A DNA stretch of 64,000 nucleotides, taken from the sequence record phage_1. One strand, written 5' to 3'. Within the stretch, counting starts at the first letter, position 1, and each line of letters starts with the position of its first letter. A model generated the notes under the pieces. It was not told the DNA's origin and did no database searches. It saw only the letters and a list, made by a program, of their open reading frames with translations. This document shows positions 4,876-55,621 of the stretch, one piece after another. The position numbers were made by a program, and so were the translations under genes.

Positions 4876-5673
4876 ATGAAAGCGATTCACACCTTTCGCA
4901 TGACCGGCCAAACTGTTCTCGACATTGATGCGTACGAAGCCGCTAACTTCACCAAACCGACCAAGCTCTGGGATCGCCTGGTTAAGGTACTGCCGCAAAG
5001 CGGTGAGGTGCAGTTGGATTTTGTCATGGCATCGACGTTGGATAAGACAGTGGCAGTTATTTATACTGCTGACGGTGTGCAGAGTAAGAAGGACCTGGCA
5101 ATCGAAGATAAAGGCGGGCTGGGTTATCACTTGTTCCTGCACTGCGTAACCACTGCACCGATTTCAGCTGCGCTGGCGGGACAGTACGGTTTCGCGAATG
5201 CGTATTTCCTGGCACAGAAACTCGCCGTGAATGTTATTCCGGGTGACGTGACCACTTACCCTGAATACGTACAGCGTATCCTGCCAGAGCACTTCGCTGC
5301 AGACGACTACGATTTCAACGTGTTCCGTTTCGCATTGATCGGCGAATCGCGCGATCCAGAATACACCGTTGGCTTGCGTGCCTGTCTGCGTCACTCCGTT
5401 ATCTCTTCGGATGAAGGGATGTCGAATAACGTGAACGAAGTGTTCCCGATGATGCAAGTCGGTCCGTATATCACTTTCAACTCGTACATTCCGTTCCCGG
5501 CACAGATTCTGCCGCCGCAGAACGATAACAGTGNACNGCCAATCGCCGACAAGTATTCACTGCGTGCGAGCGAAGCAGTCGAAGTGATTAACGATCGTCG
5601 CTTTACATTGTCAGTGACCAGCGGCATCAGTGAACCGGAAGTTGCGGTCTCTCAGAGCCTGGATTTGATGTAA
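4876..5673 (+). CDS. Hypothetical (possibly virion) protein
   Basis: 265-aa ORF, RBS AAGGA, strongly biased codons, TATGAC motif upstream. Confidence 0.55.
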   Translation: MKAIHTFRMTGQTVLDIDAYEAANFTKPTKLWDRLVKVLPQSGEVQLDFVMASTLDKTVAVIYTADGVQSKKDLAIEDKGGLGYHLFLHCVTTAPISAALAGQYGFANAYFLAQKLAVNVIPGDVTTYPEYVQRILPEHFAADDYDFNVFRFALIGESRDPEYTVGLRACLRHSVISSDEGMSNNVNEVFPMMQVGPYITFNSYIPFPAQILPPQNDNSXXPIADKYSLRASEAVEVINDRRFTLSVTSGISEPEVAVSQSLDLM

Positions 5674-5680
5674 AAGTGTG

Positions 5681-5715
5681 CCTGGTCTCCTTGTGAGACC
5701 AGGTCTCTTTATTTT
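5681..5715 (+). terminator. Rho-independent terminator
   Basis: CCTGGTCTC-CTTGT-GAGACCAGG plus T-rich tail. Confidence 0.7.
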
Positions 5716-5839
5716 AGCCCTCTAAACGCACTCACAACCTTCTAAAGCCTCTCTAACGGTAGAACGACCCTCTAAAGTGATAAAAGCTCTCAAAACGCGT
5801 TTGAGAGCGTTATAGAGGGTGTACTCTGAATAAAAATAA

Positions 5840-5908
5840 TTTCAGATATATATTACCTAGGTGATAGAAGACAATCTATCAACTCAATCGACTATTAATC
5901 TAAAGGAG
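5840..5908 (+). promoter_or_regulatory. Early promoter + hairpin + leader cassette, copy 1
   Basis: TTTCAGATATATATTACCTAGGTGA contains TATATTAC (phiKZ early motif); TGATAGA/TCTATCA hairpin; AATCGACTATTAATCTAAAGGAG. Confidence 0.75.
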
Positions 5909-5915
5909 TATTACC

Positions 5916-6059
5916 ATGTTAACTCGTAACCATAAACGTGCCATCTTCGCCATCGTTGCTGTTGTTGCTTTCGCGGTACTGTCTATCACTGTAACTCAAG
6001 ATTACAACAAGTGCATCGATAACGGTAACTCTGTTGCCATGTGTACAGGTCGCGGCTAA
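5916..6059 (+). CDS. Small single-pass membrane protein, 47 aa (not in ORF track)
   Basis: MLTRNHKRAIFAIVAVVAFAVLSITVTQDYNKCIDNGNSVAMCTGRG; RBS AAGGAG; TAATG coupling to next ORF. Confidence 0.75.
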   Translation: MLTRNHKRAIFAIVAVVAFAVLSITVTQDYNKCIDNGNSVAMCTGRG

Positions 6060-6241
6060 TGGACTTTTCTGATACGCAGTTTGCCGAGTTCTTATCTCAC
6101 CCGCGTGTTAAACGTGAGTGGGATAATCTCACTAACGGTGTTCGTCATCAGGACGAAGAAGAAATTGTTCACGTTACCGCGCAAGTCTTACTCGTCTCAC
6201 CGACAGGTAATGTGTTTCCAATGCAGCAGGAGATTTACTAA
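6059..6241 (+). CDS. Hypothetical early protein (MDFSDTQF...)
   Basis: Start overlaps upstream stop (TAATG); 60 aa. Confidence 0.6.
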   Translation: MDFSDTQFAEFLSHPRVKREWDNLTNGVRHQDEEEIVHVTAQVLLVSPTGNVFPMQQEIY

Positions 6242-6429
6242 TGGGTGTTTTAGTTAATTACGATGGTAAAAACGGAATNGTGCTTCGCGGCGTGGNAGAN
6301 AACTTATATGTAGNGGTGAATCCANAAACCNCAGAACGAACNTTTATNGTGGGGCCNAAAAGCGCTTTACCNAAGCCGGANTGGAAAGAAGAGNTGGNGA
6401 AGTTCCGTGGGGAANTNGGGAACAATTAG
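6241..6429 (+). CDS. Hypothetical early protein
   Basis: 62 aa, RBS AGGAG, TAATG overlap; many Ns. Confidence 0.55.
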   Translation: MGVLVNYDGKNGXVLRGVXXNLYVXVNPXTXERXFXVGXKSALXKPXWKEEXXKFRGEXGNN

Positions 6430-6441
6430 TATAGATAATTT

Positions 6442-6470
6442 AATACCACCTACGGGTGGTATTATTTTTT
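6442..6470 (+). terminator. Rho-independent terminator
   Basis: AATACCACC-TACG-GGTGGTATT plus T tract. Confidence 0.75.
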
Positions 6471-8030: not shown

Positions 8031-8175
8031 CACTAACCNNNNNATGAAATAACTTTACCCGAGTGCTGGAAGCACTCGGGTAATTCCATGCATATAAATA
8101 GTTCGTCGTATTTTTTTTTGATCTCGGCAAGACGCATAAACTGCCCGTAGGGGAGCCTAAGCTCCCCAGTGCTCG

Positions 8176-12590: not shown

Positions 12591-12673
12591 TAATCCGTAA
12601 GGATTACGTTGCCTAAGATTAGCTTACTCCCTTNGGGGNGNNAGNTTTTTNNTTTTTTNTNAAAATTTNTANN

Positions 12674-12691
12674 TAGATATTATCTTAGGGA
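12674..12691 (+). promoter_or_regulatory. Promoter-like motif, class II (AGATAGATRTTATCT type)
   Basis: TAGATATTATCTTAGGGA right after the capsid terminator; 5' part obscured by Ns. Confidence 0.55.
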
Positions 12692-12725
12692 GAGAGTCGT
12701 TCGGTTTTAACTTAAGGAGACAGTA

Positions 12726-12809
12726 ATGGTAATCAATTTAGAGAGATCAAGACTAGTTGCACCGATGTTTGATGGGCGCGGTTTTATGGCGAACGGTCCC
12801 AACGTCTAA
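12726..12809 (+). CDS. Small ORF, 27 aa (not in ORF track)
   Basis: MVINLERSRLVAPMFDGRGFMANGPNV; strong RBS AAGGAG 6 nt upstream. Confidence 0.45.
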   Translation: MVINLERSRLVAPMFDGRGFMANGPNV

Positions 12810-12865
12810 TACCCTAAAGTTTTTTACGTTAAGGGCACTGGGTATGAACCCGTGCCCAAAGTAAT

Positions 12866-12890
12866 CTGAGATAGATATTATCTACGTGAA
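12866..12890 (+). promoter_or_regulatory. Promoter-like motif, class II
   Basis: CTGAGATAGATATTATCTACGTGAA upstream of the operon carrying nvRNAP beta. Confidence 0.6.
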
Positions 12891-12922
12891 TAATTCTTTT
12901 GGTATTATTACTGGGATGTTCA

Positions 12923-15748: not shown

Positions 15749-17419
15749 ATGAGCATTACTGTTGAACAAATCAAAAACGTCATCGTTAAACACCTCGATC
15801 AGGACGCGGTACTGTCGCAGTTGAATAACGTGATGCGTAGTCGTAGCATTCCGCCAGATCAGGCGTTAAAGATTGCGACGTATGTTGCGGCATGGGCAGC
15901 ATCCAAAGGGGGTAGTGAAGCACAGGTTATCGCATATGCAGTCGATGCGTATAAAGCAGCTGCCTATCAGCAGGTGCATAACGCAGGCGACGCGTATANN
16001 GACGATCGTCACACCAAACTGGTTAATGCTTGGGAACAAGTCGGTAAGATTCTTGCCGAAATTCGTTCTCAGCAGTCCGGCGGTTTGGGTGGCAGTGGTG
16101 GTTTAGGTGGTGGTAGCAACGCAGGCGGGTTACTGGGCGGTAACAGTTCTGGCGGTGTGCGTGTTACTGATGGCTTGACCATGNCTTCTGCGCCATCCGG
16201 TGGTGTTAAGATTGGTAACACGGATGCGGCACTAACCGTGATTGCTGGCGGCGCAGGTCTTAACCTGGTCAGTGATCCTATTCTGAACCCACAGCCAGCG
16301 CAAGTAGCCCCAGCACAACAGCCCCAGCCTGAACCAGCACCGGTGCCTGTACAACCAATGCCGGTGTCTAATGCTACAGTTAATAACCCAGTGCTTTCCC
16401 CACTCGGCGCAACAGAAGAAACCGAGAAGGACACTACCAATGGCCCAATTAACAACATTCTGCAGGAGATTGATTTGATGGAAGACTACGCACTTCACGA
16501 GCTNAAAACCCCCGAGCTTAAAATGTCNATTCCAGCGAAGGAAGCTAACAGTCGCATTAAGCAATCTGTTTACGCGGAAACGCGTGATTGGGCTACACCG
16601 TTGCAAGATATCTTTAACGGTAATGAAGAGGTTGTTTTCTACGACGGGGCTGACCTGATTGTGCGTGCACGGGATAGTTATCGCGCGTATCTGGTTGGTG
16701 TTAACACTGATATGTGCGAACGCATGAAGCAATTTGTTGCTAAGCACGACGCACTGAAATCCGATCTCGACAGCCTGGCGTTGGTAGAAGATGTTGAAAC
16801 TATCATGGCTAAGGTGAAACGTACGATCGATGAGCTGCGTAAGAACACGAAAGAACTGCACGATTATGCGATTGCGAACAGCAGCGAAGCAGAAGTGGTT
16901 ATCAGTGAAATTTCTCGCTTTGCTAATGCGTACCTGGCGAATATCACTTTCCTGGTACACAACGCGCTGTCGCTGGGCACTAAGCGTGGTAAAGATGTGC
17001 CGAAGTTCAAAGCCATCGATTTCGAACGGAAAATCAGCGATATTGATTTCTTCGTAAAAGATCTGTTCACTGCAACCGCTGGCGACAACGGCGTAAGTGA
17101 ATATGAAGACTGGTTCCGTGACCTGTTCCTGATGGTGGCGAACTCTCTGCGCAAACTGACTATCAAGCTGAGCGATTCTGGCAAGGTGGTTAATCTGATT
17201 CAGAGCCAGTTCACCATCGTGATTCCGGGCATGTACCATTCTGTTGATAAACACGACGTAGTTACGGTAGCGTCTCTGGGCAATACCGCAGACCCGGTTG
17301 TGTCTATCTACGAAGCAGTACAGGAAAACGTGCCACATGCAATTGTATTGATGCAGCTGCCGCAGCACACTTACTTGCTTCTGAGCAATGGTGAGAAAAC
17401 TGCACCAGTGTTGTACTAA
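15749..17419 (+). CDS. Conserved hypothetical protein with Gly-rich and Pro/Gln-rich linkers
   Basis: 556 aa, RBS AAGGAG, biased codons. Confidence 0.65.
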   Translation: MSITVEQIKNVIVKHLDQDAVLSQLNNVMRSRSIPPDQALKIATYVAAWAASKGGSEAQVIAYAVDAYKAAAYQQVHNAGDAYXDDRHTKLVNAWEQVGKILAEIRSQQSGGLGGSGGLGGGSNAGGLLGGNSSGGVRVTDGLTMXSAPSGGVKIGNTDAALTVIAGGAGLNLVSDPILNPQPAQVAPAQQPQPEPAPVPVQPMPVSNATVNNPVLSPLGATEETEKDTTNGPINNILQEIDLMEDYALHEXKTPELKMXIPAKEANSRIKQSVYAETRDWATPLQDIFNGNEEVVFYDGADLIVRARDSYRAYLVGVNTDMCERMKQFVAKHDALKSDLDSLALVEDVETIMAKVKRTIDELRKNTKELHDYAIANSSEAEVVISEISRFANAYLANITFLVHNALSLGTKRGKDVPKFKAIDFERKISDIDFFVKDLFTATAGDNGVSEYEDWFRDLFLMVANSLRKLTIKLSDSGKVVNLIQSQFTIVIPGMYHSVDKHDVVTVASLGNTADPVVSIYEAVQENVPHAIVLMQLPQHTYLLLSNGEKTAPVLY

Positions 17420-17426
17420 GTAATAC

Positions 17427-17460
17427 GGAGACCTTCGGGTCTCCTATTATTATTTTTTAT
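17427..17460 (+). terminator. Rho-independent terminator
   Basis: GGAGACC-TTCG-GGTCTCC plus T-rich tail. Confidence 0.8.
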
Positions 17461-17484
17461 TCTATCGTGAAAAGGAGTATTAAA

Positions 17485-17751
17485 ATGTCTAGTGTTGAAG
17501 CAGTAATCTATTTTGAAAACGATGGGGTCGCGGGGTGCGGCTTCCCGAAGACAGCTGGGGTTAAATTTCTGTTGGCAAAGTATAAAGAAGAGCTTAAGAA
17601 AACGGCAGGGCAGAACCCTGGCGTGCCACTGCGTAGTGTTTTTCCTGAGATGGAGAAGGCTGCAAAAGTTGATCCGGTGTTGGGTATGTTCTGCGGGATG
17701 ATCAAAGAGCGATTTCCTGACATTGATAAGTACCACATTACGCTGGCGTAA
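17485..17751 (+). CDS. Hypothetical protein
   Basis: Start revised to ATG 17485 after AAGGAG. Confidence 0.6.
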   Translation: MSSVEAVIYFENDGVAGCGFPKTAGVKFLLAKYKEELKKTAGQNPGVPLRSVFPEMEKAAKVDPVLGMFCGMIKERFPDIDKYHITLA

Positions 17752-17785
17752 TTATTATAGAGTAGCTCTATAATGAGGTTCGAGC

Positions 17786-18088
17786 ATGGTAAAGTTCATT
17801 GTTGTCAACATGGATTTTGAGCGTNGTGTGNGTTTTNNCTTTGAGTTACCTGAAAACAAAGNGNCTGAATATTTATTACCCGGCTTCCAAAAATCCAAAA
17901 CAGCGATTAGACATGGACGTCGCCGGCAAATCTTCTACAACGCCCGTAAAGGCCTCCTGAAGGCGTTAAAAGCAGCAAAGGATACAAAGGTATTGGAAAA
18001 GCTAGAACCTTTCCAGAACGACCCTNTGGCGATTGGTATCATGCTCGACGAACTGGTTAATAAACCCAAAGCTGCTGCAGAAGATTAA
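17786..18088 (+). CDS. Hypothetical protein
   Basis: 100 aa, RBS GAGG. Confidence 0.55.
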   Translation: MVKFIVVNMDFERXVXFXFELPENKXXEYLLPGFQKSKTAIRHGRRRQIFYNARKGLLKALKAAKDTKVLEKLEPFQNDPXAIGIMLDELVNKPKAAAED

Positions 18089-18150
18089 AAAAAGAAAAGG
18101 TACCTCTCCCCGAAGGGAGAGGTAAACCTTATTTCTTTTTCTTTTTTTTT
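18087..18150. terminator. Bidirectional terminator between convergent genes
   Basis: A tract, TACCTCTCCC-CGAA-GGGAGAGGTA, T tract. Confidence 0.8.
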
Positions 18151-20895
18151 TTAGAGGACGTTGTCTGGGTTNTCGTNGNTAGTTNNTTCACCACCTTCTG
18201 TGCCTTCCNTTCCCTCGGTAGTTNTTTCCGTGGTTTCGGTCGACTCAGTAGTTTCCTCTGTACTATCACCACCGGTGCCGTTATCCGTATCGAGATCGAG
18301 GTCTAAATCATCGTCACCCCCACCGCCGAGATCCCCATCGCCACCACCAGTGTCACCGCCCGCATCAAAACCACCACCGAATCCGCCGGAAGCATCATTA
18401 GGATCAAGGTCGGCATTCTTCGCTAACGTTTCCAGTCGCCCGGTGAAACGTTTCGCCAATTGAATCAGCGTTTTCGAAGCAGCCATCGCTTCATCAGTCA
18501 TCATGGTGATGTTGTCCTGACGAGAATCATCGTCGTAAACCAGATCGAAGAAGTCGGTTTCAATACCTTGTTTACGCAGCCAGTTGCGCGTATAGAAGGA
18601 CTTGATCATCGTCTTCAGATCGTTCGGGTCCATCGAGATGCCTTCTTGCTGGAGTTGCGCAGCAATGTCATCCGTTACAACCAGATCAGCCAGCTTCTCA
18701 AAGAACTCCGTACGTTTATCGAACAGCTCCATCTGCGAAGCTGCTGCCGATGTGTCGGGTGGTGGTAAGGTTACTTTCATACCGTTGATAAACGCAGCCA
18801 GATACTCAGAGACCTTTTTCGTAATCTGGTCAGTAGTCATCCCATTGCCGTTAGCATTGATGTACTCTGCAATGATTTTAATCATCGCTGATTGCAACGA
18901 CGGAGAGGCCAACATCCCATTAACTACGTAACGTGTCAGTGGCTTAGAGAGAATCTCTTGCTTCTTAACAACCTGCTGGGTGACCAGTAACGATTTAGAG
19001 AAGATCTGTGAAGCAAACTCGATGTTCTCGGGGGTCATTACCAGGTCAGGGTCAACACCTGCGATGTGACAAGTGCGACGTAACAGACCTTCGTCGAAAT
19101 CCTTATCCGGGTATTTATAATCCGGCGTAGTGTCCGACACAGACACTTTGGTACTACCGTAGTAGTCGTTACCAATAACGTTAAACGCAATACCTGCGTT
19201 TGTCGTCATTGCCCAGGTGTCGTTCATGTCCCCCCACATCGGTTGACGACGGTTATAGGAGTTCATGATGTCTGTTTTCAGCTGGTCAATTGTTTTCTGA
19301 CCGTTCATGTCATCTGGTGCCAACTCAATGTCGTACTGCATGTGACGTGCAGAGTTTAACACCGCAGAGTTCATGGTAGCGAACAACAGCGCCATACGGA
19401 CAGTAGAGATAACGAACGAGCGTTCGGTAATAGATACACCGATACCATCTTCATCAAAGTCCGTGGCAAAATAGCAAAGGTTTTCCGCAGGAATATAAAT
19501 AACCTGCGTATGGCGTTTTGCCAGATGGCGCGCCAGCATGATACGGCTGAACGTTTCGGTTACTGTCATGCTAATCTCAGCACCACCCAACGCCTCACCC
19601 AACGCTTTTGTCAGCTGGTCTTCAGCAATCTCACCATAACGCGCTGTTAAGCGGTTAGCAATGTCTGGTGTGATTCGGGTTGTGTTGCCCATCCCCAGAT
19701 TCGCGCGGTTGATTGTCGAATCTACCATACCGTCGTTGTTCAGGTAGTTCATGAAGTTCGCATCCCCGTAAAGTGTGGAACGCGAGTTAATGAAGTTACC
19801 CATTTCGTCAACGATGGCCAGATAACCTATGGGGTTACGAACATCGTCACCGATAACGAGTGGGAGTGTGGACTCTGCTGGCAGTAATCGTTCCGTGTAT
19901 TCGATTTTGTTGGCATCGGAGAAACTCATCTTCGGTACTTCGCCGTAAAGCTTTTGCTCAGGCGTTTTCTGGTACGCTTCGTTGAGGTCGCCGATGTTGA
20001 TTAAACCGAGTTTTGCCTTCTCTTGTTCGCTGTCTGTGAACTGGTCAGCGTTATACTCTGACGCACCTGTCGGCGTAGAAGGTTGTTCATATGCGTACTG
20101 CTCTAACTGACCGAACAGGCCGGTGCGAGCATTCTCCTGTGCCACACGGCGATAAGCCTCTGGTAGCAGGGTAATACGCGGGTTGTCGGTGATAACGATA
20201 TCCAGGGAAGCTAACATACCGTCTGCTTTAAACGGACTGTTAGGGGCTGATGCAAAGTTAAGTTTAATGGTTTGTGGCTTGGTGGGCTTGTCAGCGCCAC
20301 GTGCACGACCCAGAATACTTTCTACGCCAACCTTCGGTTTGTTTTCACCGCCAATCTTGCCCAGGATACCCAACTGACGTTCAAAGAAGTCAGATTGGCT
20401 ACGGCGCAACGATTCGGTTGCAACAGACGGCTTTAAGCCGAAGAGTTCATCGAATCCGGTATCTGAAATCAGCAACACCGGGCTCGCGCCTTTGGATTTC
20501 AGTGCATCGTAAATCCACTGATACAGTTTGTTGGGTAACTGGCGCGTGTGGTCATGGAATTCACGCACAGGTTCCAATAACTGCTGACGCAGGTCGATCG
20601 GGATATCAGCCACGTTGTCGTAAATCAGCGTGGTGTTAATCAAATCTTTTGTGGACAGGAGCGAGGAGGTCGCGATGGTAACAATGACCTCTAACTCAGG
20701 GAGCGCATCAAAGATACGTTCGGCATTTTTAACGGTGCGAATGCGGCTACTCGCAATGCCCGTGAGTTCTGTACGGGTTGGTGTAACGCCGCCATCTTCA
20801 CGCTTACCGCGTTGCTGCTGAGCCGACGGGCTCGTGGACTTACGCAGTATGGCAGCTACCGCGGGGTCGCCCGTTAATTTACTAATATCTTCCAT
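18151..20895 (-). CDS. Portal protein precursor (phiKZ gp129 / SPN3US gp81-like)
   Basis: 914 aa; ATE161 and AQE254 protease-type motifs; FATDFDEDGIG portal-like region; acidic Gly-rich C-terminal tail; synteny. Confidence 0.75.
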   Translation of the reverse strand: MEDISKLTGDPAVAAILRKSTSPSAQQQRGKREDGGVTPTRTELTGIASSRIRTVKNAERIFDALPELEVIVTIATSSLLSTKDLINTTLIYDNVADIPIDLRQQLLEPVREFHDHTRQLPNKLYQWIYDALKSKGASPVLLISDTGFDELFGLKPSVATESLRRSQSDFFERQLGILGKIGGENKPKVGVESILGRARGADKPTKPQTIKLNFASAPNSPFKADGMLASLDIVITDNPRITLLPEAYRRVAQENARTGLFGQLEQYAYEQPSTPTGASEYNADQFTDSEQEKAKLGLINIGDLNEAYQKTPEQKLYGEVPKMSFSDANKIEYTERLLPAESTLPLVIGDDVRNPIGYLAIVDEMGNFINSRSTLYGDANFMNYLNNDGMVDSTINRANLGMGNTTRITPDIANRLTARYGEIAEDQLTKALGEALGGAEISMTVTETFSRIMLARHLAKRHTQVIYIPAENLCYFATDFDEDGIGVSITERSFVISTVRMALLFATMNSAVLNSARHMQYDIELAPDDMNGQKTIDQLKTDIMNSYNRRQPMWGDMNDTWAMTTNAGIAFNVIGNDYYGSTKVSVSDTTPDYKYPDKDFDEGLLRRTCHIAGVDPDLVMTPENIEFASQIFSKSLLVTQQVVKKQEILSKPLTRYVVNGMLASPSLQSAMIKIIAEYINANGNGMTTDQITKKVSEYLAAFINGMKVTLPPPDTSAAASQMELFDKRTEFFEKLADLVVTDDIAAQLQQEGISMDPNDLKTMIKSFYTRNWLRKQGIETDFFDLVYDDDSRQDNITMMTDEAMAASKTLIQLAKRFTGRLETLAKNADLDPNDASGGFGGGFDAGGDTGGGDGDLGGGGDDDLDLDLDTDNGTGGDSTEETTESTETTEXTTEGXEGTEGGEXTXXXNPDNVL

Positions 20896-30670: not shown

Positions 30671-31131
30671 TGAAGATTATTACCATAGTGGGGCCAGACA
30701 CGGCTAACGGCAGGAAATATTCCACAGATATCCTCGCGCTTTATAACGAGCTGGACAAAAGCGAAATAGAAAGCTATCGAAAAGAGACGGGTATTAATGT
30801 CCGTTTTACGCCGGCTAAATCGTTAGCCGAGCGCTTCCGGGGTCGTTTACTGGCGGTCGTGGACGACGGTGTCTTGTATGGCTTTGCGCAATACCGCACG
30901 ATGACTGAAGAGGGTGTGACGATGATGTCGGTATCCTCACTGGTCGTTAGCAGCAGCGCACGTGGTAAAGGTTACGGCACCGCGTTGATGGATGCGGTAA
31001 AGAAATCCGCAACGGAAAAAGGGTGTACAGTTGTTCACCTGTCCGTGAACGCCGGTAACGCTGCCGCGAAGTCGCTCTACGACAAAGCTGGCTTTAAGGT
31101 AGGTGCTTACCAGATGTATTGGAGGGTGTGA
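30670..31131 (+). CDS. GNAT family acetyltransferase
   Basis: VSSLVVSSSARGKGYGTALM; NAAAKSLYDKAGF; start revised to TGATG overlap at 30670. Confidence 0.85.
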   Translation: MKIITIVGPDTANGRKYSTDILALYNELDKSEIESYRKETGINVRFTPAKSLAERFRGRLLAVVDDGVLYGFAQYRTMTEEGVTMMSVSSLVVSSSARGKGYGTALMDAVKKSATEKGCTVVHLSVNAGNAAAKSLYDKAGFKVGAYQMYWRV

Positions 31132-33136: not shown

Positions 33137-33174
33137 ACCCACTCCTTCGGGAGTGGGTCGACTCTATTTTTTTT
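33137..33174 (+). terminator. Rho-independent terminator
   Basis: ACCCACTCC-TTCG-GGAGTGGGT plus T tract. Confidence 0.8.
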
Positions 33175-33217
33175 GGATAGATGTTATCTTAGGGAGACGT
33201 GCAAAAATTACGTTTCA
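33172..33217 (+). promoter_or_regulatory. Promoter-like motif, class II, with downstream hairpin
   Basis: TTGGATAGATGTTATCTTAGGGA then GAGACGT/ACGTTTC stem. Confidence 0.6.
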
Positions 33218-33291
33218 TCCTTAGCATATGCTAGAAGCCGTTGTGAGTCGGTTAAAACTCACCAACTTAAACTTAAAAGCGAGTAAACAAA

Positions 33292-34056
33292 ATGTCAAAA
33301 CTCAATAAAGCAGCAACCAAAGAATGGCTTTCCGTACCTACCGCAGATGGTCAGTATCGCTACGTATTCACGTATGACGAAAATGACCTGACGGCAAAAG
33401 GTATTCCGCACATGTTAAGTCACAAACTGATTAACAGCGTGACCGGTGCCACCTTAGTAGGTTCCGGCGGAAGGACAATCTTTTGTGCCCCCAGTTGGGA
33501 TCAAACTGAACTGACCAAGAAAATGCTCGGTGAACTCCGGGCGGTTTCCGCACGTCTGTTCTTTAAGCTGATTGCCAGAAAACCGGCGCTATGGGATGCA
33601 TGGTCTCAACACAATCTCGAGGCATTGCGTGGGGAGTGTCTGAATTACGTATTGGTCGAAGAAGTGATTGATAACTTCTTCGCTAACGTGATGAAAACCG
33701 AACGACTGCGTAAGCCGAACACCGACGGTTATTCGTTTGTCTCCGTTAAGAGCAGCGAACTGATTCGGGGTGAGTTTGCAGGGCATGTCCTTTCGGTAAC
33801 TCGGAACCTGAGTTTCTTTGGCCAGCCTTTCAGTGAGCCAGTTGTTCAGGTAACTTATGATTTCCGTTTACCGTTTACTGTTCGGAATGAGTTTGACCCA
33901 GGTCAAGTTTCGTTGAAGTTTTTATATCCTCTCCAGTCATGGCCGTTATTGAAGAGGTTCTTAGCTGAGCCCCGTGTAGCTGCGGTGCTGCAAGCGTGGA
34001 TTGATTCATGGCCAGAAGGCATTGAGGAAAAATCGAAAACGCGAGTTGACTTCTAA
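33292..34056 (+). CDS. Hypothetical protein
   Basis: 254 aa, between promoter motif and terminator. Confidence 0.6.
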   Translation: MSKLNKAATKEWLSVPTADGQYRYVFTYDENDLTAKGIPHMLSHKLINSVTGATLVGSGGRTIFCAPSWDQTELTKKMLGELRAVSARLFFKLIARKPALWDAWSQHNLEALRGECLNYVLVEEVIDNFFANVMKTERLRKPNTDGYSFVSVKSSELIRGEFAGHVLSVTRNLSFFGQPFSEPVVQVTYDFRLPFTVRNEFDPGQVSLKFLYPLQSWPLLKRFLAEPRVAAVLQAWIDSWPEGIEEKSKTRVDF

Positions 34057-34062
34057 GTAAGC

Positions 34063-34097
34063 TAGGCACTCTTCGGAGTGCCTATTATTTTTTTTCT
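34063..34097 (+). terminator. Rho-independent terminator
   Basis: TAGGCACTC-TTCG-GAGTGCCTA plus T tract. Confidence 0.8.
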
Positions 34098-34788: not shown

Positions 34789-34827
34789 CCCCTCTTACCT
34801 TCGGGTAAGAGGGCATTGTCTTTTTTT
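34789..34827 (+). terminator. Rho-independent terminator
   Basis: CCCTCTTACC-TTCG-GGTAAGAGGG; same core as 7776-7800. Confidence 0.75.
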
Positions 34828-34871: not shown

Positions 34872-34940
34872 TTTCAGATATATATTACTTAGGTGAGAGT
34901 TGCTCGTAAACTCTCTAATCGACTATTAATCTAAAAGGAG
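34872..34940 (+). promoter_or_regulatory. Early promoter + hairpin + leader cassette, copy 2
   Basis: TTTCAGATATATATTACTTAGGTGA; GAGAGTT/AACTCTC hairpin; AATCGACTATTAATCTAAAAGGAG. Confidence 0.75.
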
Positions 34941-34947
34941 TATTCTA

Positions 34948-35313
34948 ATGCGTTTTAAACATCAAACCGTTGTGTTGGCAAAGAAAGCATTTCTGGTTCG
35001 TCTCTCTTACATTATTNCTCGTGTCACTGCGAAGGATGTTACGCAGAAAGACATTGCATTGTTGGTAGGCNGNTNNCCNNCACAAANNTNTGNGNTTAAA
35101 AATGAACGCGAGAAAGCCGTGACTATCGAAACTCTGATGCGTGTTGCCGATACACTGCGCCTGAATTACGAAATCGTTTACCGTTCCATCAACGGCAAAT
35201 GCCGCCATAGCTTCAAAATTGAATCCTGCATCGACTACATGAATAACTGTCCTATCCGGGTACGAGAAACAGGACTTAAAGTCATGGCACGTAAACCTTC
35301 TGCAGTGATGTAG
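34948..35313 (+). CDS. XRE-family helix-turn-helix protein
   Basis: VTQKDIALLVG...KNEREKAVTIETLMRVADTL matches the XRE/Cro HTH pattern. Confidence 0.75.
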   Translation: MRFKHQTVVLAKKAFLVRLSYIIXRVTAKDVTQKDIALLVGXXXXQXXXXKNEREKAVTIETLMRVADTLRLNYEIVYRSINGKCRHSFKIESCIDYMNNCPIRVRETGLKVMARKPSAVM

Positions 35314-35324
35314 GGAGCAAACGT

Positions 35325-35711
35325 ATGAATTGGTATGTGAGCGGTATCACCCGTCGTGTAATGACGGAAGAGGATGATCGATGTAAACATCTTAAAGTGG
35401 GGTCTATAGCTCCACGTTATACGGCAGAGTGCGACCCATGGGGCCGCGAAACGTATTACATGTGCGAGAACTGCTGGGAAAAANTGCNGGNNNAAATNGN
35501 NGNTGAAGAAGTGGTNTGCGNCGATTGCAAAGGTACCTTCCCGAAACGGGATACTGTTGNGNGGAAATGGCACGACTTTGACCCCAGTCAAGGGGATAAA
35601 GAACTTTGTATCTGTAATAACTGCGTGTCTTTACCGACACATTTAAACCGTGTAGAGAATGACCGTCGGGCATTTGAACACGACTTTCCAGAAGCAGCTT
35701 TCTGGGATTAA
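35325..35711 (+). CDS. Cys-rich putative zinc-binding protein
   Basis: CENC, CxDC and CNNC motifs. Confidence 0.6.
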   Translation: MNWYVSGITRRVMTEEDDRCKHLKVGSIAPRYTAECDPWGRETYYMCENCWEKXXXXXXXEEVXCXDCKGTFPKRDTVXXKWHDFDPSQGDKELCICNNCVSLPTHLNRVENDRRAFEHDFPEAAFWD

Positions 35712-36243
35712 CTAGTATAACCCTTAAGGAGTATATCATGGCGAAGGCCCCTAAAACTGTAGCAAAAGATTCAATGGCAAGCAACGCGATTAAAGCCACA
35801 AAAACGCGTACTACCGAATTTCCACGTTCACCTACCATTCCTAAACCGGATGTAATTGTACCAATCAGTGAACGTCTGAAAACGATTCACATCGAACGTG
35901 AATTTCCGATTGACCTTGGTCAGGAAATCGTTGCGGTTAATCTTGGTAGTGATGTCCGCTTTACTATCTACAAGGGATTAACTAGTGTAAACCTTAAGGA
36001 GTATATCATGGCGAAGGCCCCTAAAACTGTAGCAAAAGATTCAACGGCAAGCACCGCGACTAAATCTGCAAAAACGTCTACTACAGAATTTCCACGTTCA
36101 CCTACCATTCCCAAACCGGATGTAATTGTACCAATCAGTGAACGTCTGAAAACAATTCACATCGAGCGCGAATATCCGATTGACCTTGGTCAGGAAATCG
36201 TTGCGGTTAACCTTGGTAGCGACGTACGCTTTACCATCTATAA
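35704..36243 (+). repeat. 270-bp direct tandem duplication (35704-35973 / 35974-36243)
   Basis: Both units begin GGGATTAACTAGTRTAAMCCTTAAGGAGTATATCATGGCGAAGGCCCCTAAAACTG; ATGs at 35738 and 36008. Confidence 0.95.
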
Positions 36244-36664
36244 AGGCGCGCATCTGAACAACATGGTGCTAACCCGTGGTGATGAAGTTATCGGTCTGTC
36301 TCGTTACGACACGCAAATCGAAAACATCTATCCGGTGTTTGCAGTAGCGATGTTGCGTTTGTTCATGCAGGATAAAGCCGACCTTTGTGGTCAGCTTGCG
36401 GGTATGGCGGATCGTGTTGGTCATATTCTGCCGACGCTGGTGAAACTGTACCCAGTTACGATTGACGTGGCGTTTACTACTGTAGACAACAACCACGGTT
36501 ATATCGTGCTGACCAAAGACGGTAAAGTTATCGCTGGTAATCTGACTGATAACGAAGTGCAGAAGCATATGGACAAATTTGCGTTCATGGTGAATCGCTT
36601 GGCGCACGTCAGTGTCAAACATTCTGAAACTTGGACGACGCTTGTCTCCAAACCTGAACTGTAA
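35738..36664 (+). CDS. Hypothetical protein with duplicated N-terminal domain and second in-frame start
   Basis: 308 aa; MAKAPKTVAKDS...DVRFTIYKG present twice. Confidence 0.75.
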   Translation: MAKAPKTVAKDSMASNAIKATKTRTTEFPRSPTIPKPDVIVPISERLKTIHIEREFPIDLGQEIVAVNLGSDVRFTIYKGLTSVNLKEYIMAKAPKTVAKDSTASTATKSAKTSTTEFPRSPTIPKPDVIVPISERLKTIHIEREYPIDLGQEIVAVNLGSDVRFTIYKGAHLNNMVLTRGDEVIGLSRYDTQIENIYPVFAVAMLRLFMQDKADLCGQLAGMADRVGHILPTLVKLYPVTIDVAFTTVDNNHGYIVLTKDGKVIAGNLTDNEVQKHMDKFAFMVNRLAHVSVKHSETWTTLVSKPEL

Positions 36665-36667
36665 TCA

Positions 36668-36705
36668 TTAAGGGGTCTTCGGACCCCTTAATTTTTTGTC
36701 TTTTT
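36668..36705 (+). terminator. Rho-independent terminator
   Basis: TTAAGGGGTC-TTCG-GACCCCTTAA plus T tract. Confidence 0.8.
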
Positions 36706-36753
36706 ACGCGTTATCCTCATGTTGTGACAGCATTACCTTTTGAGGGCATTACA

Positions 36754-37752: not shown

Positions 37753-37758
37753 TAACGG

Positions 37759-38577: not shown

Positions 38578-38586
38578 GGTACCAAC

Positions 38587-39390: not shown

Positions 39391-39399
39391 GGAGAGAAT

Positions 39400-41717: not shown

Positions 41718-41744
41718 TTTTCAGATAGATGTTATTTTACTGAA
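41718..41744 (+). promoter_or_regulatory. Promoter-like motif, class II
   Basis: TTTTCAGATAGATGTTATTTTACTGAA. Confidence 0.6.
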
Positions 41745-41771
41745 CCTAACTGTAAAGAAAGGAAAAAGTAG

Positions 41772-44002: not shown

Positions 44003-44229
44003 TGGAAAACCTCACGCCGGTTGAGATAGTGGCGCTATTCGATCGTTACGTATATGGACAAACGCAGGCAAAGAAAATGNTGGCGATTGCGCTACGTAAT
44101 CGATACCGTGCCAATAAACTTAACGTAGTGGACCGTATGTCGGTCCACAAACAGAACCTTTTAATAGAAGGTCCAACAGGCACGGGTAANNCNNAGTTGA
44201 TGCGTGAAGAAAAACAGAAACAAAAGTGA
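44002..44229 (+). pseudogene. hslU: Truncated HslU (ClpY) ATPase, N-terminal 75 aa only
   Basis: LTPVEIVALFDRYVYGQTQAKKMxAIALRNRYR...KQNLLIEGPTGTG matches the HslU N-terminus; stops just after Walker A. Confidence 0.8.
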
Positions 44230-50077: not shown

Positions 50078-50120
50078 TACCAGCTATCCTTCGGGGTGGC
50101 TGGTACGCTTTATTTTATTT
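50078..50120 (+). terminator. Rho-independent terminator
   Basis: TACCAGCTATCC-TTCG-GGGTGGCTGGTA plus T-rich tail. Confidence 0.75.
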
Positions 50121-50167
50121 CAGATAGATGTTATCTCAGTGAACCTCTGAAATTTACGTTTCAATCA
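50118..50167 (+). promoter_or_regulatory. Promoter-like motif, class II, with hairpin
   Basis: TTTCAGATAGATGTTATCTCAGTGAA then CTCTGA/TCAGAG stem. Confidence 0.6.
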
Positions 50168-54532: not shown

Positions 54533-54605
54533 AAGGCGTTGAAGGACACTCTACTCCACATCAACTAGGATGACGCTTATCCCAAGGGTAGCGAATAAAG
54601 CAGCA

Positions 54606-54641
54606 CCCTACTCCCGAAGGAGTAGGGTTTCTTCTTTTTTG
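54606..54641 (+). terminator. Rho-independent terminator
   Basis: ACCCTACTCC-CGAA-GGAGTAGGGT plus T tract. Confidence 0.8.
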
Positions 54642-54661
54642 TCTAGTGTGATTACAATTAT

Positions 54662-54731
54662 TTTCAGATATATATTACTTAGGTGAGAGTTAACCATTAA
54701 CTCTTATCTAATCGACCATTATCTTAAGGAG
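54662..54731 (+). promoter_or_regulatory. Early promoter + hairpin + leader cassette, copy 3
   Basis: TTTCAGATATATATTACTTAGGTGA; GAGAGTTAA/TTAACTCTT hairpin; AATCGACCATTATCTTAAGGAG. Confidence 0.75.
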
Positions 54732-54738
54732 TTTTAAC

Positions 54739-55185
54739 ATGTACATTCTGAATAACGAACTTACTAAGTACGCTAGCAAAAACCCGANTATGATTTNTTT
54801 NCTAATCGTGATGGCGGCCAACAAACAAGACCCTAGCGAATTCACTACTGAGGTCTTCGAAGAGATTATCGCTAACGCCAAAGAAGCCACGTTCCAGACC
54901 ACAGNGCCTACTCGCGACGAGTTCCCCCTAGGTGAAGCCGGCGATGTAATGTTTAACGACATGGTTGCTTCGTACTACATCAATAGACGTGGTATGGAAA
55001 TCGAATACGATGAACTTCCTACTAGCAGCTTTGCTGAAATGATTCGTGATTATCGTCGTCAAGTTGTCTCTGACGATATCGTAAAGAAATACATGGCACA
55101 AATCAGCCCATTCAGTCTTGAATTCGAAAACCGCGCGGTTGCCTTAGCAACACATCGCCTGCGTTTAGAAAAAGAAGTACACTAA
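54739..55185 (+). CDS. Hypothetical early protein
   Basis: 148 aa, directly after cassette copy 3. Confidence 0.65.
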   Translation: MYILNNELTKYASKNPXMIXXLIVMAANKQDPSEFTTEVFEEIIANAKEATFQTTXPTRDEFPLGEAGDVMFNDMVASYYINRRGMEIEYDELPTSSFAEMIRDYRRQVVSDDIVKKYMAQISPFSLEFENRAVALATHRLRLEKEVH

Positions 55186-55246
55186 TAATAACCCGGCGGG
55201 CAAAGTCCCGCCAATCAACCTGCAATCTACAAAAAAGGAATATCCC

Positions 55247-55465
55247 ATGCGCAACCTCTTCTCCAAATCTGAAATCAAACCTGTTGTTGAAACCGCAGCC
55301 AAACGTAAACCTGACANGNNTGANCTGNNGCTGAAAANGTNTGNAGCAGAAGCCAAAGCGTTNCNGNAAACAATGAAAGACGGNGATAAAATGATTGACA
55401 ATGTTGAAGTAACCTACGGTGTTAAAGACCGCCCAAAGAATAACGGCCTCGTGTGGGTCTGTTAA
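55247..55465 (+). CDS. Small hypothetical protein
   Basis: 72 aa, RBS AAGGA. Confidence 0.55.
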   Translation: MRNLFSKSEIKPVVETAAKRKPDXXXLXLKXXXAEAKAXXXTMKDXDKMIDNVEVTYGVKDRPKNNGLVWVC

Positions 55466-55486
55466 TCGACGATTGAGGATAAAGTC

Positions 55487-55621
55487 ATGAAGAACAAAAA
55501 GCTTCGGCTCCCCTTCTTTTTTTGTTTCCTTTTCTTTTTTGTTTGCTCTTGTTCGGATTCTGGTACGCACTACGCTTTTAATATGCTGGCAGGGGGTCTA
55601 AAAATCTTACGACCTCAATAA
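55487..55621 (+). CDS. Possible small lipoprotein/membrane peptide, 44 aa (not in ORF track)
   Basis: MKNKKLRLPFFFCFLFFFVCSCSDSG...; RBS GAGGA; may instead be a pyrimidine-rich non-coding tract. Confidence 0.3.
   Translation: MKNKKLRLPFFFCFLFFFVCSCSDSGTHYAFNMLAGGLKILRPQ

What the first reader, a model, noticed from the sequence alone, without database searches (positions are those of the whole stretch)
5840..5908. Three-copy promoter + covarying hairpin + conserved leader cassette (PeSL-like) heading accessory modules
Copies at 5840-5908, 34872-34940 and 54662-54731 share a near-identical 25-nt promoter (TTTCAGATATATATTAC(C/T)TAGGTGA). A hairpin follows whose sequence differs but whose pairing is kept (TGATAGA/TCTATCA; GAGAGTT/AACTCTC; GAGAGTTAA/TTAACTCTT), then AATCGAC(T/C)ATTA(A)TCT(A/T)AAGGAG ending in the SD. 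Each copy follows a terminator and precedes a different small gene. TATATTAC is the known phiKZ early motif. The structure-conserved 5' hairpin and the conserved pre-SD sequence suggest selection on the RNA: 5'-end protection, export from the early infection vesicle/nucleus, or a translational enhancer/repressor site. It resembles the promoter-early-stem-loop cassettes that shuffle modules in T4-type phages. I do not know of it being described in this phage group.
Basis: partly seen in the sequence, partly recalled or inferred. Interest (0 to 1): 0.7.

Follow-up and report, generated by a model that had tools for sequence, protein, structure and literature searches.

The report
Jumbo-phage early promoter with 5' hairpin leader
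The three repeats are copies of a known type of jumbo-phage early promoter, and each is followed by a leader whose first ~20 bases are kept as an RNA stem-loop, most likely to protect the first phage messages from host RNases; they do not look like mobile shuffling cassettes.

Summary
The window is a SPN3US-like (Seoulvirus) jumbo phage. The 25-nt motif occurs exactly three times (0 expected), each after a terminator and before a short 2-3-gene unit.

The motif matches the published early (virion RNA polymerase) promoter consensus of phiKZ-related phages. By homology with mapped promoters, transcription should start at the G 6 nt after TATATTAC. That is exactly where each stem-loop begins.

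The three copies belong to a seven-copy subclass ("class A") in the near-identical genome Lh1B. All seven have a +1 hairpin. A second subclass (AGATAGAT(A/G)TTAT, "class B") mostly lacks it.

Across 44 non-redundant intergenic instances from Erwinia phages and uncultured jumbo contigs, 21 have a contiguous stem of at least 5 bp starting at +1 to +3, against 4.5±2 in shuffles. A covariance-model alignment shows 91% pairing and many compensatory changes.

A GACYAT leader motif recurs in about half. Its role is unresolved, and it has no extra 16S complementarity.

Most likely function: a 5'-terminal stabiliser hairpin plus an open leader and strong Shine-Dalgarno, like the T7 gene-10 or ompA leaders.

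The PeSL-like shuffling idea is not supported. The architecture differs, and orthologous genes keep their cassette across genera. No transcription start has been mapped.

The parts
5680..5704 (+). Intrinsic terminator ending the upstream gene (4876-5673), 136 nt before cassette 1
   Evidence: 10-bp stem with 6 GC pairs, followed by a T-run
5840..5862 (+). Cassette 1 promoter core (TTTCAGATATATATTACCTAGGT). Predicted start is G5863
   Evidence: Consensus match: PMC7058600 Table 2. Start-site spacing: PMC5312081
5863..5880 (+). Cassette 1 5'-terminal stem-loop: GAUAGA-AGACAA-UCUAUC (6 bp)
   Evidence: -5.9 kcal/mol, z = -3.8. The Stratton copy at the same map position has GAGAGA/TCTCTC, a compensatory change
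5886..5897 (+). Cassette 1 conserved leader motif AATCGACTATTA
5903..5918 (+). Cassette 1 Shine-Dalgarno AAGGAG (5903-5908) and ATG (5916-5918)
5916..6464 (+). Unit headed by cassette 1: a 47-aa predicted membrane protein (5916-6059) and two more small ORFs, closed by a terminator at 6441-6464
   Evidence: phrog_8574. SPN3US annotates three small genes here
34790..34813 (+). Intrinsic terminator 59 nt before cassette 2
34872..34894 (+). Cassette 2 promoter core. Predicted start is G34895
   Evidence: covariance-model E = 5e-9
34895..34915 (+). Cassette 2 5'-terminal stem-loop: GAGAGUU-GCUCGUA-AACUCUC (7 bp)
   Evidence: -8.8 kcal/mol, z = -3.6. SPN3US and Asesino keep the stem while the loop is rewritten
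34917..34928 (+). Cassette 2 leader motif AATCGACTATTA
34935..34950 (+). Cassette 2 Shine-Dalgarno AAGGAG (34935-34940) and ATG (34948-34950)
34948..36692 (+). Unit headed by cassette 2: an HTH DNA-binding protein (121 aa) and ORFs of 128 and 308 aa, closed by a terminator at 36667-36692
   Evidence: (phrog_7126)
54605..54628 (+). Intrinsic terminator 34 nt before cassette 3
54662..54684 (+). Cassette 3 promoter core. Predicted start is G54685
   Evidence: E = 2e-9
54685..54705 (+). Cassette 3 5'-terminal stem-loop: GAGAGUUAA-CCA-UUAACUCUU (9 bp)
   Evidence: -7.5 kcal/mol, z = -5.0. SPAsTU has GAGAGTTGA/TCAACTCTC, a compensatory change
54710..54721 (+). Cassette 3 leader motif AATCGACCATTA
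54726..54741 (+). Cassette 3 Shine-Dalgarno AAGGAG (54726-54731) and ATG (54739-54741)
54739..55540 (+). Unit headed by cassette 3: ORFs of 148 aa and 72 aa, then a T-rich stretch before the array of paralogous virion-protein genes
   Evidence: (phrog_8484)

Best explanation
Each cassette is an early promoter read by the phage's virion-packaged multisubunit RNA polymerase, fused to a conserved 5' untranslated leader.

**Proposed steps**
1. The polymerase recognises the AT-rich element TTTCAGATATATATTAC and starts at the G six bases downstream (G5863, G34895, G54685).
2. The first 18-21 transcribed bases fold into a 6-9 bp stem-loop that leaves 0-2 unpaired bases at the 5' end.
3. That terminal stem-loop hinders 5'-end-dependent decay in the host (RppH pyrophosphate removal and RNase E entry). 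It would keep these first messages alive before any phage RNase inhibitor has been made.
4. A 20-30 nt unstructured A/U-rich leader, often carrying (A)ATCGACYAT, presents a strong AAGGAG Shine-Dalgarno 7 nt before the ATG.

**Scope.** The three copies are members of a seven-copy subclass of early promoters in this phage. Each heads a short unit of 2-3 small genes closed by a terminator.

**Shown here**
- The promoter matches the known consensus.
- The hairpin is placed at the predicted start.
- The hairpin is conserved as structure.

**Inferred**
- The start site itself.
- Early timing.
- The stabilising effect.
For: **Promoter identity**
- The window is 99.2% identical to Escherichia phage vB_EcoM_Lh1B, a Seoulvirus. 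That genome carries several RNA polymerase beta-like subunit genes.
- The motif fits the published consensus TTTCARRYAKATATTATYWAAGTGWA / TATATTACDWHDGTG (PMC7058600).

**Start site**
- phiKZ and phiR1-37 early promoters start 6 nt after the consensus element, and AR9 has AAATATATATTAT-(6N)-G+1 (PMC5312081).
- The 201phi2-1 motifs end at the start-site region (PMC11512511).
- Class B promoters in this genome leave only 26-42 nt between that predicted G and the ATG. The start therefore cannot lie far downstream.

**Hairpin**
- All 7 class A copies fold from +1 to +3, with z = -3.4 to -5.1.
- In 44 non-redundant intergenic instances from other jumbo-phage genomes, 21 have a contiguous stem of at least 5 bp starting at +1 to +3, and 18 start exactly at +1. 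Shuffles give 4.5±2.0, with a maximum of 12 in 1000.
- The same 17-mer inside coding sequence has such a stem in 1 of 13 cases.
- In the covariance-model alignment of 57 sites, 91.0% of cells pair, against 73.3% in shuffles. There are 64 double-change cells against 19.6. The covariation score is 0.306, against at most 0.059 when partners are slid by 1-3 columns.
- Related cassettes in other phages carry compensatory changes. Stratton and SPAsTU each differ by a U-A/A-U to G-C pair. Asesino and SPN3US rewrite the loop and keep the stem.
- G.U pairs on the sense strand number 50, against 8 A.C.

**Not a terminator.** None of the three hairpins is called terminator-like by the scan, and none is followed by a T-run.

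**Stabiliser precedent.** 5'-terminal stem-loops stabilise E. coli mRNAs, and RppH needs unpaired 5' bases (review PMC3997798). phiKZ makes a degradosome inhibitor, so RNase E is a known concern for this phage group (PMC4980113).
Against: - No transcription start has been mapped for SPN3US-like phages in anything I could find. The +1 assignment rests on homology.
- About a third of intergenic instances in other genomes lack a clear +1 hairpin. Most class B promoters lack one. In phiKZ only 2-3 of 7 early promoters in the first 50 kb have one. The hairpin is therefore not needed for early transcription or expression in general.
- The stems are short and AU-rich (-6 to -9 kcal/mol).
- A pure stabiliser does not explain why (A)ATCGACYAT is conserved in the leader.
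- The covariation alignment was fitted to the model structure, which inflates pairing counts.
- Many instances are related by descent.
- Excluding the first pair, the G.U versus A.C asymmetry is weak (14 against 8).
Confidence: 0.55

Rival explanations
1. The hairpin and the GACYAT leader together form an address tag read by a trans-acting factor. Candidates are a phage translational repressor or activator that sets this subclass apart in time, a ribosome-associated phage protein, or machinery that moves early messages out of the early infection vesicle.
For: - A sequence motif, (A)ATCGACYAT or TTGACYAT, recurs between hairpin and Shine-Dalgarno in roughly half of 45 leaders from several genera. 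One class B promoter has it with no hairpin (genome 25206).
- The motif is not enriched elsewhere in the window: 13 loose hits against 9 expected, three of them the cassettes. It is therefore tied to promoter-proximal leaders.
- The distance from predicted start to ATG is narrow, 44-64 nt.
- One cassette heads an HTH DNA-binding regulator.
Against: - Stem and loop sequences vary freely, so a sequence-specific hairpin binder is unlikely.
- The leader motif is absent from many hairpin-bearing copies.
- No candidate protein has been identified.
- Nothing here tests binding or localisation.
Confidence: 0.2
2. The hairpin acts during transcription, not afterwards. Folding of the nascent 5' end would help the sigma-less virion polymerase clear the promoter, limit backtracking or R-loop formation, or set a promoter-proximal pause.
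For: - The 5' arm begins at +1 in 18 of the 21 strict cases. This precision fits a link to initiation.
- The hairpin goes with the near-perfect class A core and is largely absent from class B.
Against: - Class B promoters and most phiKZ early promoters work, or are predicted to work, without it.
- I know of no precedent in multisubunit polymerases for a required +1 hairpin.
- The idea cannot be tested here.
Confidence: 0.1
3. PeSL-like mobile regulatory cassettes: the repeated 70-80 bp units serve as recombination sites that insert, delete or swap the small gene modules they head.
For: - The cassettes are repeated, roughly 70-80 bp, intergenic, follow terminators and head short units of small genes.
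- The neighbourhood of cassette 3 is rich in indels relative to SPN3US. There is a 791-bp window-only segment ending 86 nt before the promoter, a 403-bp SPN3US-only segment about 750 nt after it, and another indel 1.3 kb upstream.
Against: - PeSL defining features are not met: no sigma70 promoter, the stem-loop is not within the promoter, it has no terminator function, and the cassettes are not dense (PMC2839356).
- No breakpoint lies inside a cassette, and cassettes 1 and 2 have none within about 800 nt.
- The inserted segments are not flanked by two cassettes.
- Orthologues of 6 of the 7 cassette-headed genes are cassette-headed in genomes with only 24-53% protein identity. The cassettes also sit at matching map positions in Stratton and Asesino. 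This points to vertical inheritance.
Confidence: 0.07
4. A DNA-level element: either the inverted repeat extrudes as a hairpin or cruciform that the virion polymerase uses (as in phage N4), or it is an operator for a dimeric regulator.
For: - Phage N4's virion polymerase recognises promoter hairpins (my own knowledge of that system).
- The inverted repeat lies directly beside the promoter core.
Against: - The stem sequence varies between copies, so one operator-binding protein cannot read them all.
- G.U pairs work only in sense-strand RNA, and they outnumber A.C 50 to 8.
- The repeat lies downstream of the predicted start, whereas N4 hairpins lie upstream.
- Class B promoters lack it.
Confidence: 0.04

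Closest known systems
Early (virion RNA polymerase) promoters of phiKZ-related jumbo phages (phiKZ TATATTAC; 201phi2-1, OBP and N1M2 extended consensus)
   Same: - The core is nearly identical: TTTCAGATATATATTACYTAGGTG against TTTCARRYAKATATTATYWAAGTG / TATATTACDWHDGTG.
- There is a G six bases after the AT-rich element.
- The location is intergenic, at operon starts.
- The genome carries virion polymerase subunit genes.
   Different: - The published descriptions stop at the start site. None that I read mentions a structure-conserved +1 stem-loop or a conserved leader.
- This genome also has two distinguishable sub-classes (ATATATTAC-YTAGGTG and AGATAGAT(A/G)TTAT-CT), which I did not see reported.
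T7 phi10 promoter and gene 10 leader (my own knowledge, not tested here)
   Same: A phage-polymerase promoter whose transcript begins with a stem-loop at +1. An unstructured A/U-rich leader, a strong Shine-Dalgarno and the ATG follow, about 50-60 nt in all.
   Different: - The polymerase is a different type (single-subunit).
- The T7 leader's enhancer is proposed to pair with 16S rRNA. The leader here shows no 16S complementarity above shuffles.
5'-terminal stabiliser stem-loops of E. coli mRNAs (ompA, papA; Emory, Bouvet and Belasco, cited in PMC3997798)
   Same: A stem-loop with almost no unpaired bases at the 5' end. Structure matters, not sequence. The Shine-Dalgarno is left free.
   Different: - Those were shown by half-life measurements. 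Here the effect is inferred.
- The stems here are shorter and AU-rich.
- The element is repeated on a promoter subclass rather than belonging to one gene.
PeSLs (promoter-early stem-loops) of T4-type phages (PMC2839356, PMC4122927)
   Same: Repeated intergenic composite regulatory units of about 70-100 bp. Each has an early promoter, a stem-loop and a Shine-Dalgarno, and sits ahead of small genes of unknown function.
   Different: - PeSLs carry a sigma70 promoter.
- Their stem-loop lies between or over the -35/-10 boxes and terminates upstream transcription.
- They are dense in hyperplastic regions.
- Their recombination has been demonstrated.
- None of these holds here.
Phage N4 virion RNA polymerase hairpin promoters (my own knowledge)
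   Same: A virion-packaged polymerase and an inverted repeat associated with its promoters.
   Different: - The N4 hairpin is the promoter itself: it forms in DNA, lies upstream of the start and has conserved loop and stem features.
- Here the hairpin is transcribed, variable in sequence and absent from many promoters of the same phage.

Membership tests
phiKZ-type early (virion RNAP) promoter | Highly conserved AT-rich element of the TATATTAC / KATATTAY type, with the upstream TTTCARR extension | tested here: met
   Exact in all three copies. Compared with PMC7058600 Table 2.
phiKZ-type early (virion RNAP) promoter | Conserved G start site 6 nt downstream of the element | tested here: inconclusive
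   The G is present at that spacing in all copies. The spacing rule comes from PMC5312081. The actual 5' end is not mapped.
phiKZ-type early (virion RNAP) promoter | The genome encodes a virion-packaged multisubunit RNA polymerase | tested here: met
   The 99.2%-identical genome Lh1B annotates several RNAP beta-like subunit genes outside the window.
phiKZ-type early (virion RNAP) promoter | Intergenic, co-oriented with and directly upstream of an operon | tested here: met
   Each copy follows a terminator and has a Shine-Dalgarno and ATG 53-54 nt after the predicted start.
phiKZ-type early (virion RNAP) promoter | Transcripts appear within minutes and without new protein synthesis | not testable with these tools
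   I found no SPN3US-group transcriptome.
5'-terminal stabiliser stem-loop (ompA / T7 gene 10 type) | [quoted passage not shown] | tested here: met
   Given the predicted start, there are 0-2 unpaired nucleotides in all 7 genome copies. 18 of 44 non-redundant relatives start exactly at +1.
5'-terminal stabiliser stem-loop (ompA / T7 gene 10 type) | Pairing is conserved while the sequence varies | tested here: met
5'-terminal stabiliser stem-loop (ompA / T7 gene 10 type) | Removing the stem shortens mRNA half-life in an RNase E / RppH-dependent way | not testable with these tools
   Needs an experiment.
PeSL (T4-type promoter-early stem-loop) | Sigma70-consensus early promoter | tested here: not met
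   The sigma70 scan finds no + strand promoter at any cassette. The motif is of the virion-RNAP type.
PeSL (T4-type promoter-early stem-loop) | Stem-loop placed between or over the -35/-10 boxes and acting as a terminator or attenuator of upstream transcription | tested here: not met
   The hairpin lies after the promoter core and has no T-run. Separate GC-rich terminators lie 34-136 nt upstream. Definition.
PeSL (T4-type promoter-early stem-loop) | Dense clusters flanking ORFans in hyperplastic regions | tested here: not met
   7 copies in 240 kb, spaced 9-58 kb apart.
PeSL (T4-type promoter-early stem-loop) | Indel or replacement breakpoints between close relatives fall in or at the cassettes | tested here: inconclusive
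   Window against SPN3US: no breakpoint lies inside a cassette, and the nearest is 86 nt upstream of cassette 3. Three indels cluster near cassette 3 and none near cassettes 1 or 2. Orthologous genes keep their cassettes across genera.
Intrinsic terminator / 5'-UTR attenuator | GC-rich stem followed by a U-tract | tested here: not met
   The three hairpins are AU-rich, lack a T-run and are not called by the scan. One copy outside the window does carry a separate true terminator after its hairpin.
Any Rfam family | Match at the gathering score | tested here: not met
   0 matches in the whole window. Only chance-level hits at E up to 1 on the cassettes.

The most novel reading that the evidence does not exclude
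The +1 stem-loop and the GACYAT leader mark a distinct regulatory class of virion-polymerase transcripts that a dedicated factor reads. That factor might hand the messages over from the early infection vesicle to ribosomes, or switch translation on or off at a set time. The tag would then be a cis-acting sorting or timing signal specific to nucleus-forming jumbo phages, not a generic stabiliser.
Probability: 0.12. Interest if true: 0.8.

Novelty: new member of a known kind. Interest (0 to 1): 0.4.

Why it matters
The promoter itself is ordinary for this phage family. Two points are new as far as I could find.
- A discrete subclass of these promoters carries a stem-loop that begins at the predicted first transcribed base. 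Its pairing is maintained by compensatory change across Seoulvirus, Erskinevirus and uncultured jumbo phages.
- A leader motif travels with it.

Why that is useful:
- It gives a concrete, cheap hypothesis about how the very first messages of a nucleus-forming phage survive and get translated. At that stage the genome sits in the early infection vesicle and the phage has not yet made its own countermeasures.
- It offers a compact, portable expression cassette (promoter, 5' hairpin, leader and Shine-Dalgarno) for engineering these phages.
- It shows that SPN3US-like phages have at least two distinguishable early-promoter sub-classes. Transcriptome work could test whether these differ in timing.

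Tried and rejected
1. **Pairing of the leader with 16S rRNA** (a T7 epsilon-like enhancer). The best duplex energies of the three leaders against E. coli 16S are no better than shuffles (fractions 0.34-0.40). Rejected as unsupported.
2. **Rfam.** No family at gathering score. The RT-7 and picornavirus IRES hits at E 0.96 and 0.043 are far below their gathering scores and are chance.
3. **First IMG/VR scan with N at the variable base**. It was swamped by a coding coincidence...DPNFEDIYYVGE..., in unrelated marine phages. I repeated it with Y. The coding hits from that second scan served as negative controls.
4. **Whole-leader folding.** Folding 64-82 nt gave unremarkable z-scores for copies 1 and 2. 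The signal is confined to the first ~23 nt.
5. **MAFFT alignment of the genome's copies.** It put the 3' arms out of register. I therefore seeded the covariance model with seven ungapped hairpins of 8 bp stem and 4 nt loop.
6. **Protein families for the first gene of each cassette.** Pfam gave nothing. PHROGs gave 'unknown' for all except the HTH protein of cassette 2. There is no shared function to explain the subclass.
7. **The leader motif as a general translational enhancer.** It is not enriched outside the cassettes.
8. **Generality in phiKZ.** Only 2-3 of 7 early promoters in its first 50 kb have a +1 hairpin. The feature is not universal in the family.
9. **Literature.** I found no SPN3US-group transcription-start data.
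Full report
**What the window is.** The 4 kb around the finding is 99.2% identical to Escherichia phage vB_EcoM_Lh1B and about 97% identical to Salmonella phage SPN3US (genus Seoulvirus), with weaker matches in Erwinia jumbo phages. Window position x corresponds to about x+62000 in Lh1B. That genome carries several RNA polymerase beta-like subunit genes, as expected for a phiKZ-related phage with a virion-packaged polymerase.

**Check of the observation.**
- The 25-mer with up to 3 mismatches hits only 5840, 34872 and 54662, against 0.00 expected.
- The alignment shows identity from TTTCAGAT through GGTGA. A variable segment follows, then AATCGACYATTA, AAGGAG and ATG.
- There is no similarity upstream of the promoter, so the repeated unit is about 75-80 bp.
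- Terminator-like stems with T-runs lie 34-136 nt upstream of each copy.
- One correction: copies 2 and 3 share GAGAGTT...AACTCT. Within the window the "different sequence, same pairing" argument therefore rests on copy 1 against the other two.

**The promoter is a known type.**
- Published early-promoter consensus sequences for relatives are TTTCARRYAKATATTATYWAAGTGWA (N1M2), a near-identical one for OBP, BTATATTACDWHDGTG (201phi2-1) and TATATTAC (phiKZ) (PMC7058600). The cassette core fits these almost base for base.
- A review states that such AT-rich motifs, centred near -10, are the early promoters read by the virion polymerase (PMC7598289).
- The AR9 study reports AAATATATATTAT-(6N)-G+1, and says that phiKZ and phiR1-37 start 6 nt after the element (PMC5312081).
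- Applied here, the start is the last G of GGTG: G5863, G34895 and G54685.
- An internal argument agrees. Related promoters in this genome leave only 26-42 nt between that G and the ATG, so initiation cannot be far downstream.
- The start site is inferred, not mapped.

**Genome-wide picture.** I scanned the window plus the rest of Lh1B (loci L001-L005, all outside the window).

| Subclass | Core | Copies | Hairpin at +1 | Start-to-ATG distance |
|---|---|---|---|---|
| Class A | (A/G)TATATTAC-YTA(G/A)GTG-A | 7, all + strand, at genome 4.8, 58.7, 67.8, 96.9, 116.7, 164.3 and 222.8 kb | all 7 | 44-55 nt |
| Class B | AGATAGAT(A/G)TTAT-CT... | about 13 | mostly none | 26-42 nt in most |

- Sources.
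- Folded alone, the first 22-24 nt of each class A transcript give a single hairpin of -5.9 to -8.8 kcal/mol, with z = -3.4 to -5.1.
- Six of the seven class A copies carry the AATCGACTAT-type leader.
- The copy at 164.3 kb has a true GC-rich terminator with a T-run inserted between hairpin and leader.
- A covariance model of promoter plus hairpin finds only the three copies in the window at E up to 3e-5. Weak hits at 12865, 50118 and 33171 are class B sites.

**Other genomes.**
- An exact-pattern scan of IMG/VR gave 80 non-redundant instances.
- 67 are intergenic. Most come from 220-245 kb contigs, including SPN3US, phiEaH2, ChrisDB, Huxley, Caitlin, CR5 and uncultured phages.
- 13 are coding-sequence coincidences, which served as controls.
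- The stems differ widely: GAGATTAC/GTAATCTC, GAGCATTGA/TCAATGCTT, GAACTT/AAGTTT, GAGGAT/ATCCTC and GAGAG/CTCTC.

Statistics on 44 non-redundant intergenic sites:

| Test | Observed | Control |
|---|---|---|
| Contiguous stem of at least 5 bp (loop 3-9) starting at +1 to +3 | 21 of 44 (18 exactly at +1) | shuffles 4.5±2.0, maximum 12 in 1000 |
| Same test on coding-sequence occurrences | 1 of 13 | – |
| Looser MFE criterion | 29 of 44 | 28% expected, P = 2e-7 |
| Cells forming a standard pair, 57 model-aligned sites | 91.0% | 73.3% in shuffles |
| Cells with changes on both sides | 64 | 19.6 |
| Covariation score | 0.306 | at most 0.059 with partners slid by 1-3 columns |

That alignment is fitted to the model and many sites share ancestry, so the counts are generous. 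The shuffle test does not depend on any alignment.

Cassettes at matching positions in other phages tell the same story.
- Stratton, at the same map position as copy 1, has GAGAGA/TCTCTC where the window has GATAGA/TCTATC.
- SPAsTU has GAGAGTTGA/TCAACTCTC where copy 3 has GAGAGTTAA/TTAACTCTT.
- Asesino and SPN3US keep the stem of copy 2 while replacing most of its loop.
- G.U pairs, which work only in the sense RNA, outnumber A.C 50 to 8. Most of them are at the first pair.

I conclude that the stem-loop is under selection as an RNA structure at the 5' end of the transcript.

**The leader.**
- Between hairpin and Shine-Dalgarno, about half of 45 leaders carry (A)ATCGACYAT, TTGACYAT or CCGACTAT. 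In Erwinia phages the motif directly abuts CAAGGAG.
- Others share TTAACC/TTAACG-type segments.
- The motif is not enriched elsewhere in the window.
- One class B promoter has it without a hairpin.
- It has no 16S rRNA complementarity above shuffles.
- Its function remains open.

**What the cassettes head.**

| Cassette | Unit | Closing signal |
|---|---|---|
| 1 | 47-aa protein with one hydrophobic helix, plus two small ORFs | terminator at 6441-6464 |
| 2 | HTH DNA-binding protein (phrog_7126) plus ORFs of 128 and 308 aa | terminator at 36667-36692 |
| 3 | ORFs of 148 and 72 aa | T-rich stretch before an array of paralogous virion-protein genes |

Pfam finds nothing in any first gene. "Short units of small genes" is therefore right. 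"Accessory" is only partly right, because the first genes have orthologues that are also cassette-headed in distant genomes (24-53% protein identity).

**PeSL comparison.**
- PeSLs are sigma70 early promoters. Their stem-loop sits between or over the -35/-10 boxes and terminates upstream transcription. They lie densely around ORFans and have been shown to recombine (PMC2839356; PMC4122927).
- None of those defining features is met here.
- Against SPN3US, the window shows about eight indels or replacements. None has a breakpoint in a cassette.
- Three cluster within 1.4 kb of cassette 3, the nearest being 86 nt upstream of its promoter. None is within about 800 nt of cassettes 1 or 2.
- That is weak, clustered evidence. 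Together with the conserved gene-cassette pairing and matching map positions in Stratton and Asesino, I judge the shuffling role unsupported.

**Mechanism.**
- The best-supported reading is an early promoter fused to a 5'-terminal stabiliser stem-loop and an open, strongly translated leader.
- 5'-terminal stem-loops with almost no unpaired bases protect E. coli mRNAs from RNase E, and RppH needs unpaired 5' bases (review PMC3997798).
- phiKZ makes a degradosome inhibitor (PMC4980113). A cis-acting shield would make sense for messages made before such proteins exist.
- The architecture parallels the T7 phi10/gene 10 leader (my own knowledge).
- Against a purely generic stabiliser: class B promoters and most phiKZ early promoters lack the hairpin, and the leader motif remains unexplained.
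- Rivals are a factor-binding tag, a co-transcriptional role, a DNA-level element, and recombination cassettes. They are listed with their tests.

**Novelty.**
- The promoter is already known.
- I did not find the +1 hairpin, the leader motif or the two-subclass split in the jumbo-phage promoter and transcriptome papers I read.
- Rfam has no match.
- It is a new member of a known kind of element, of moderate interest.

**Masked bases.** Where relatives overlapped masked stretches of the window (block comparison with SPN3US, protein scoring), I printed only coordinates and identities. I did not read or fill any masked base.

Noticed in passing
window 12667-12700, 12865-12900, 33171-33200, 41719-41745, 50118-50145: A second family of early-type promoters (class B: AGATAGAT(A/G)TTAT-CT...). 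Most follow terminators, have short leaders and usually lack a +1 hairpin. The first site is partly masked by N.
   Followed up: partly
window 5716-5822: An array of CCYTCTAAA-like direct repeats lies between the terminator and cassette 1. It includes the palindrome AAAGCTCTCAAA/TTTGAGAGCGTT (5783-5811) and an inverted TAGAGGGT (5813-5820). It could be a protein-binding array. A similar GCGTTTGAGAGCG is seen upstream of the Stratton cassette.
   Followed up: partly
L003:38256-38356 (Lh1B 164.26 kb, outside the window): One class A cassette has a true terminator (GGCTACCCTCGGGTAGCC plus a T-run) inserted between the +1 hairpin and the AATCGACT leader. It looks like a 5'-UTR attenuator or a roughly 60-nt small RNA, as reported for phiKZ and 201phi2-1 5' UTRs. 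The gene after it begins with a lipoprotein-like signal (…VVLAAC…).
   Followed up: no
window 12726-12809: An unannotated 27-codon ORF (MVINLERSRLVAPMFDGRGFMANGPNV) has its own class B promoter and AAGGAG. It sits just after the major head protein gene and just before another class B promoter.
   Followed up: no
window 53270-55503: An indel hotspot relative to SPN3US. It holds a 791-bp window-only segment (53785-54575), a roughly 325-bp SPN3US-only segment at 53270-53329, and a 403-bp SPN3US-only gene at about 55490. Other differences: a window-only 450 bp at 30679-31128; replaced segments at 33274-34063 (starting right after a class B leader) and 46117-47093.
   Followed up: partly
window 8039-8043 and 44040-44194: The run of 5 N at 8039-8043 coincides with a 252-bp length difference to SPN3US. 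The region 44040-44194, which contains N, is about 680 bp shorter than in SPN3US. I treated both as gaps or masking and did not fill them.
   Followed up: no
window 36724-40212 and 55644-61721: Two tandem arrays of paralogous genes of about 265-340 aa. SPN3US annotates the second array as virion structural proteins.
   Followed up: no
L220:45568-45650 (phiKZ): The phiKZ early promoter upstream of the nuclear shell (chimallin) gene has a strong +1 hairpin (GAAUCUAGUAUACUAAGUACUUAGGUUC, -8.8 kcal/mol). Most other phiKZ early promoters in the first 50 kb do not.
   Followed up: partly
L001:16648-16800 (Lh1B): The likely chimallin homologue (16806-18659, directly before an RNAP beta-subunit gene as in phiKZ) is preceded by two class B-type promoters, not by a class A cassette.
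   Followed up: no
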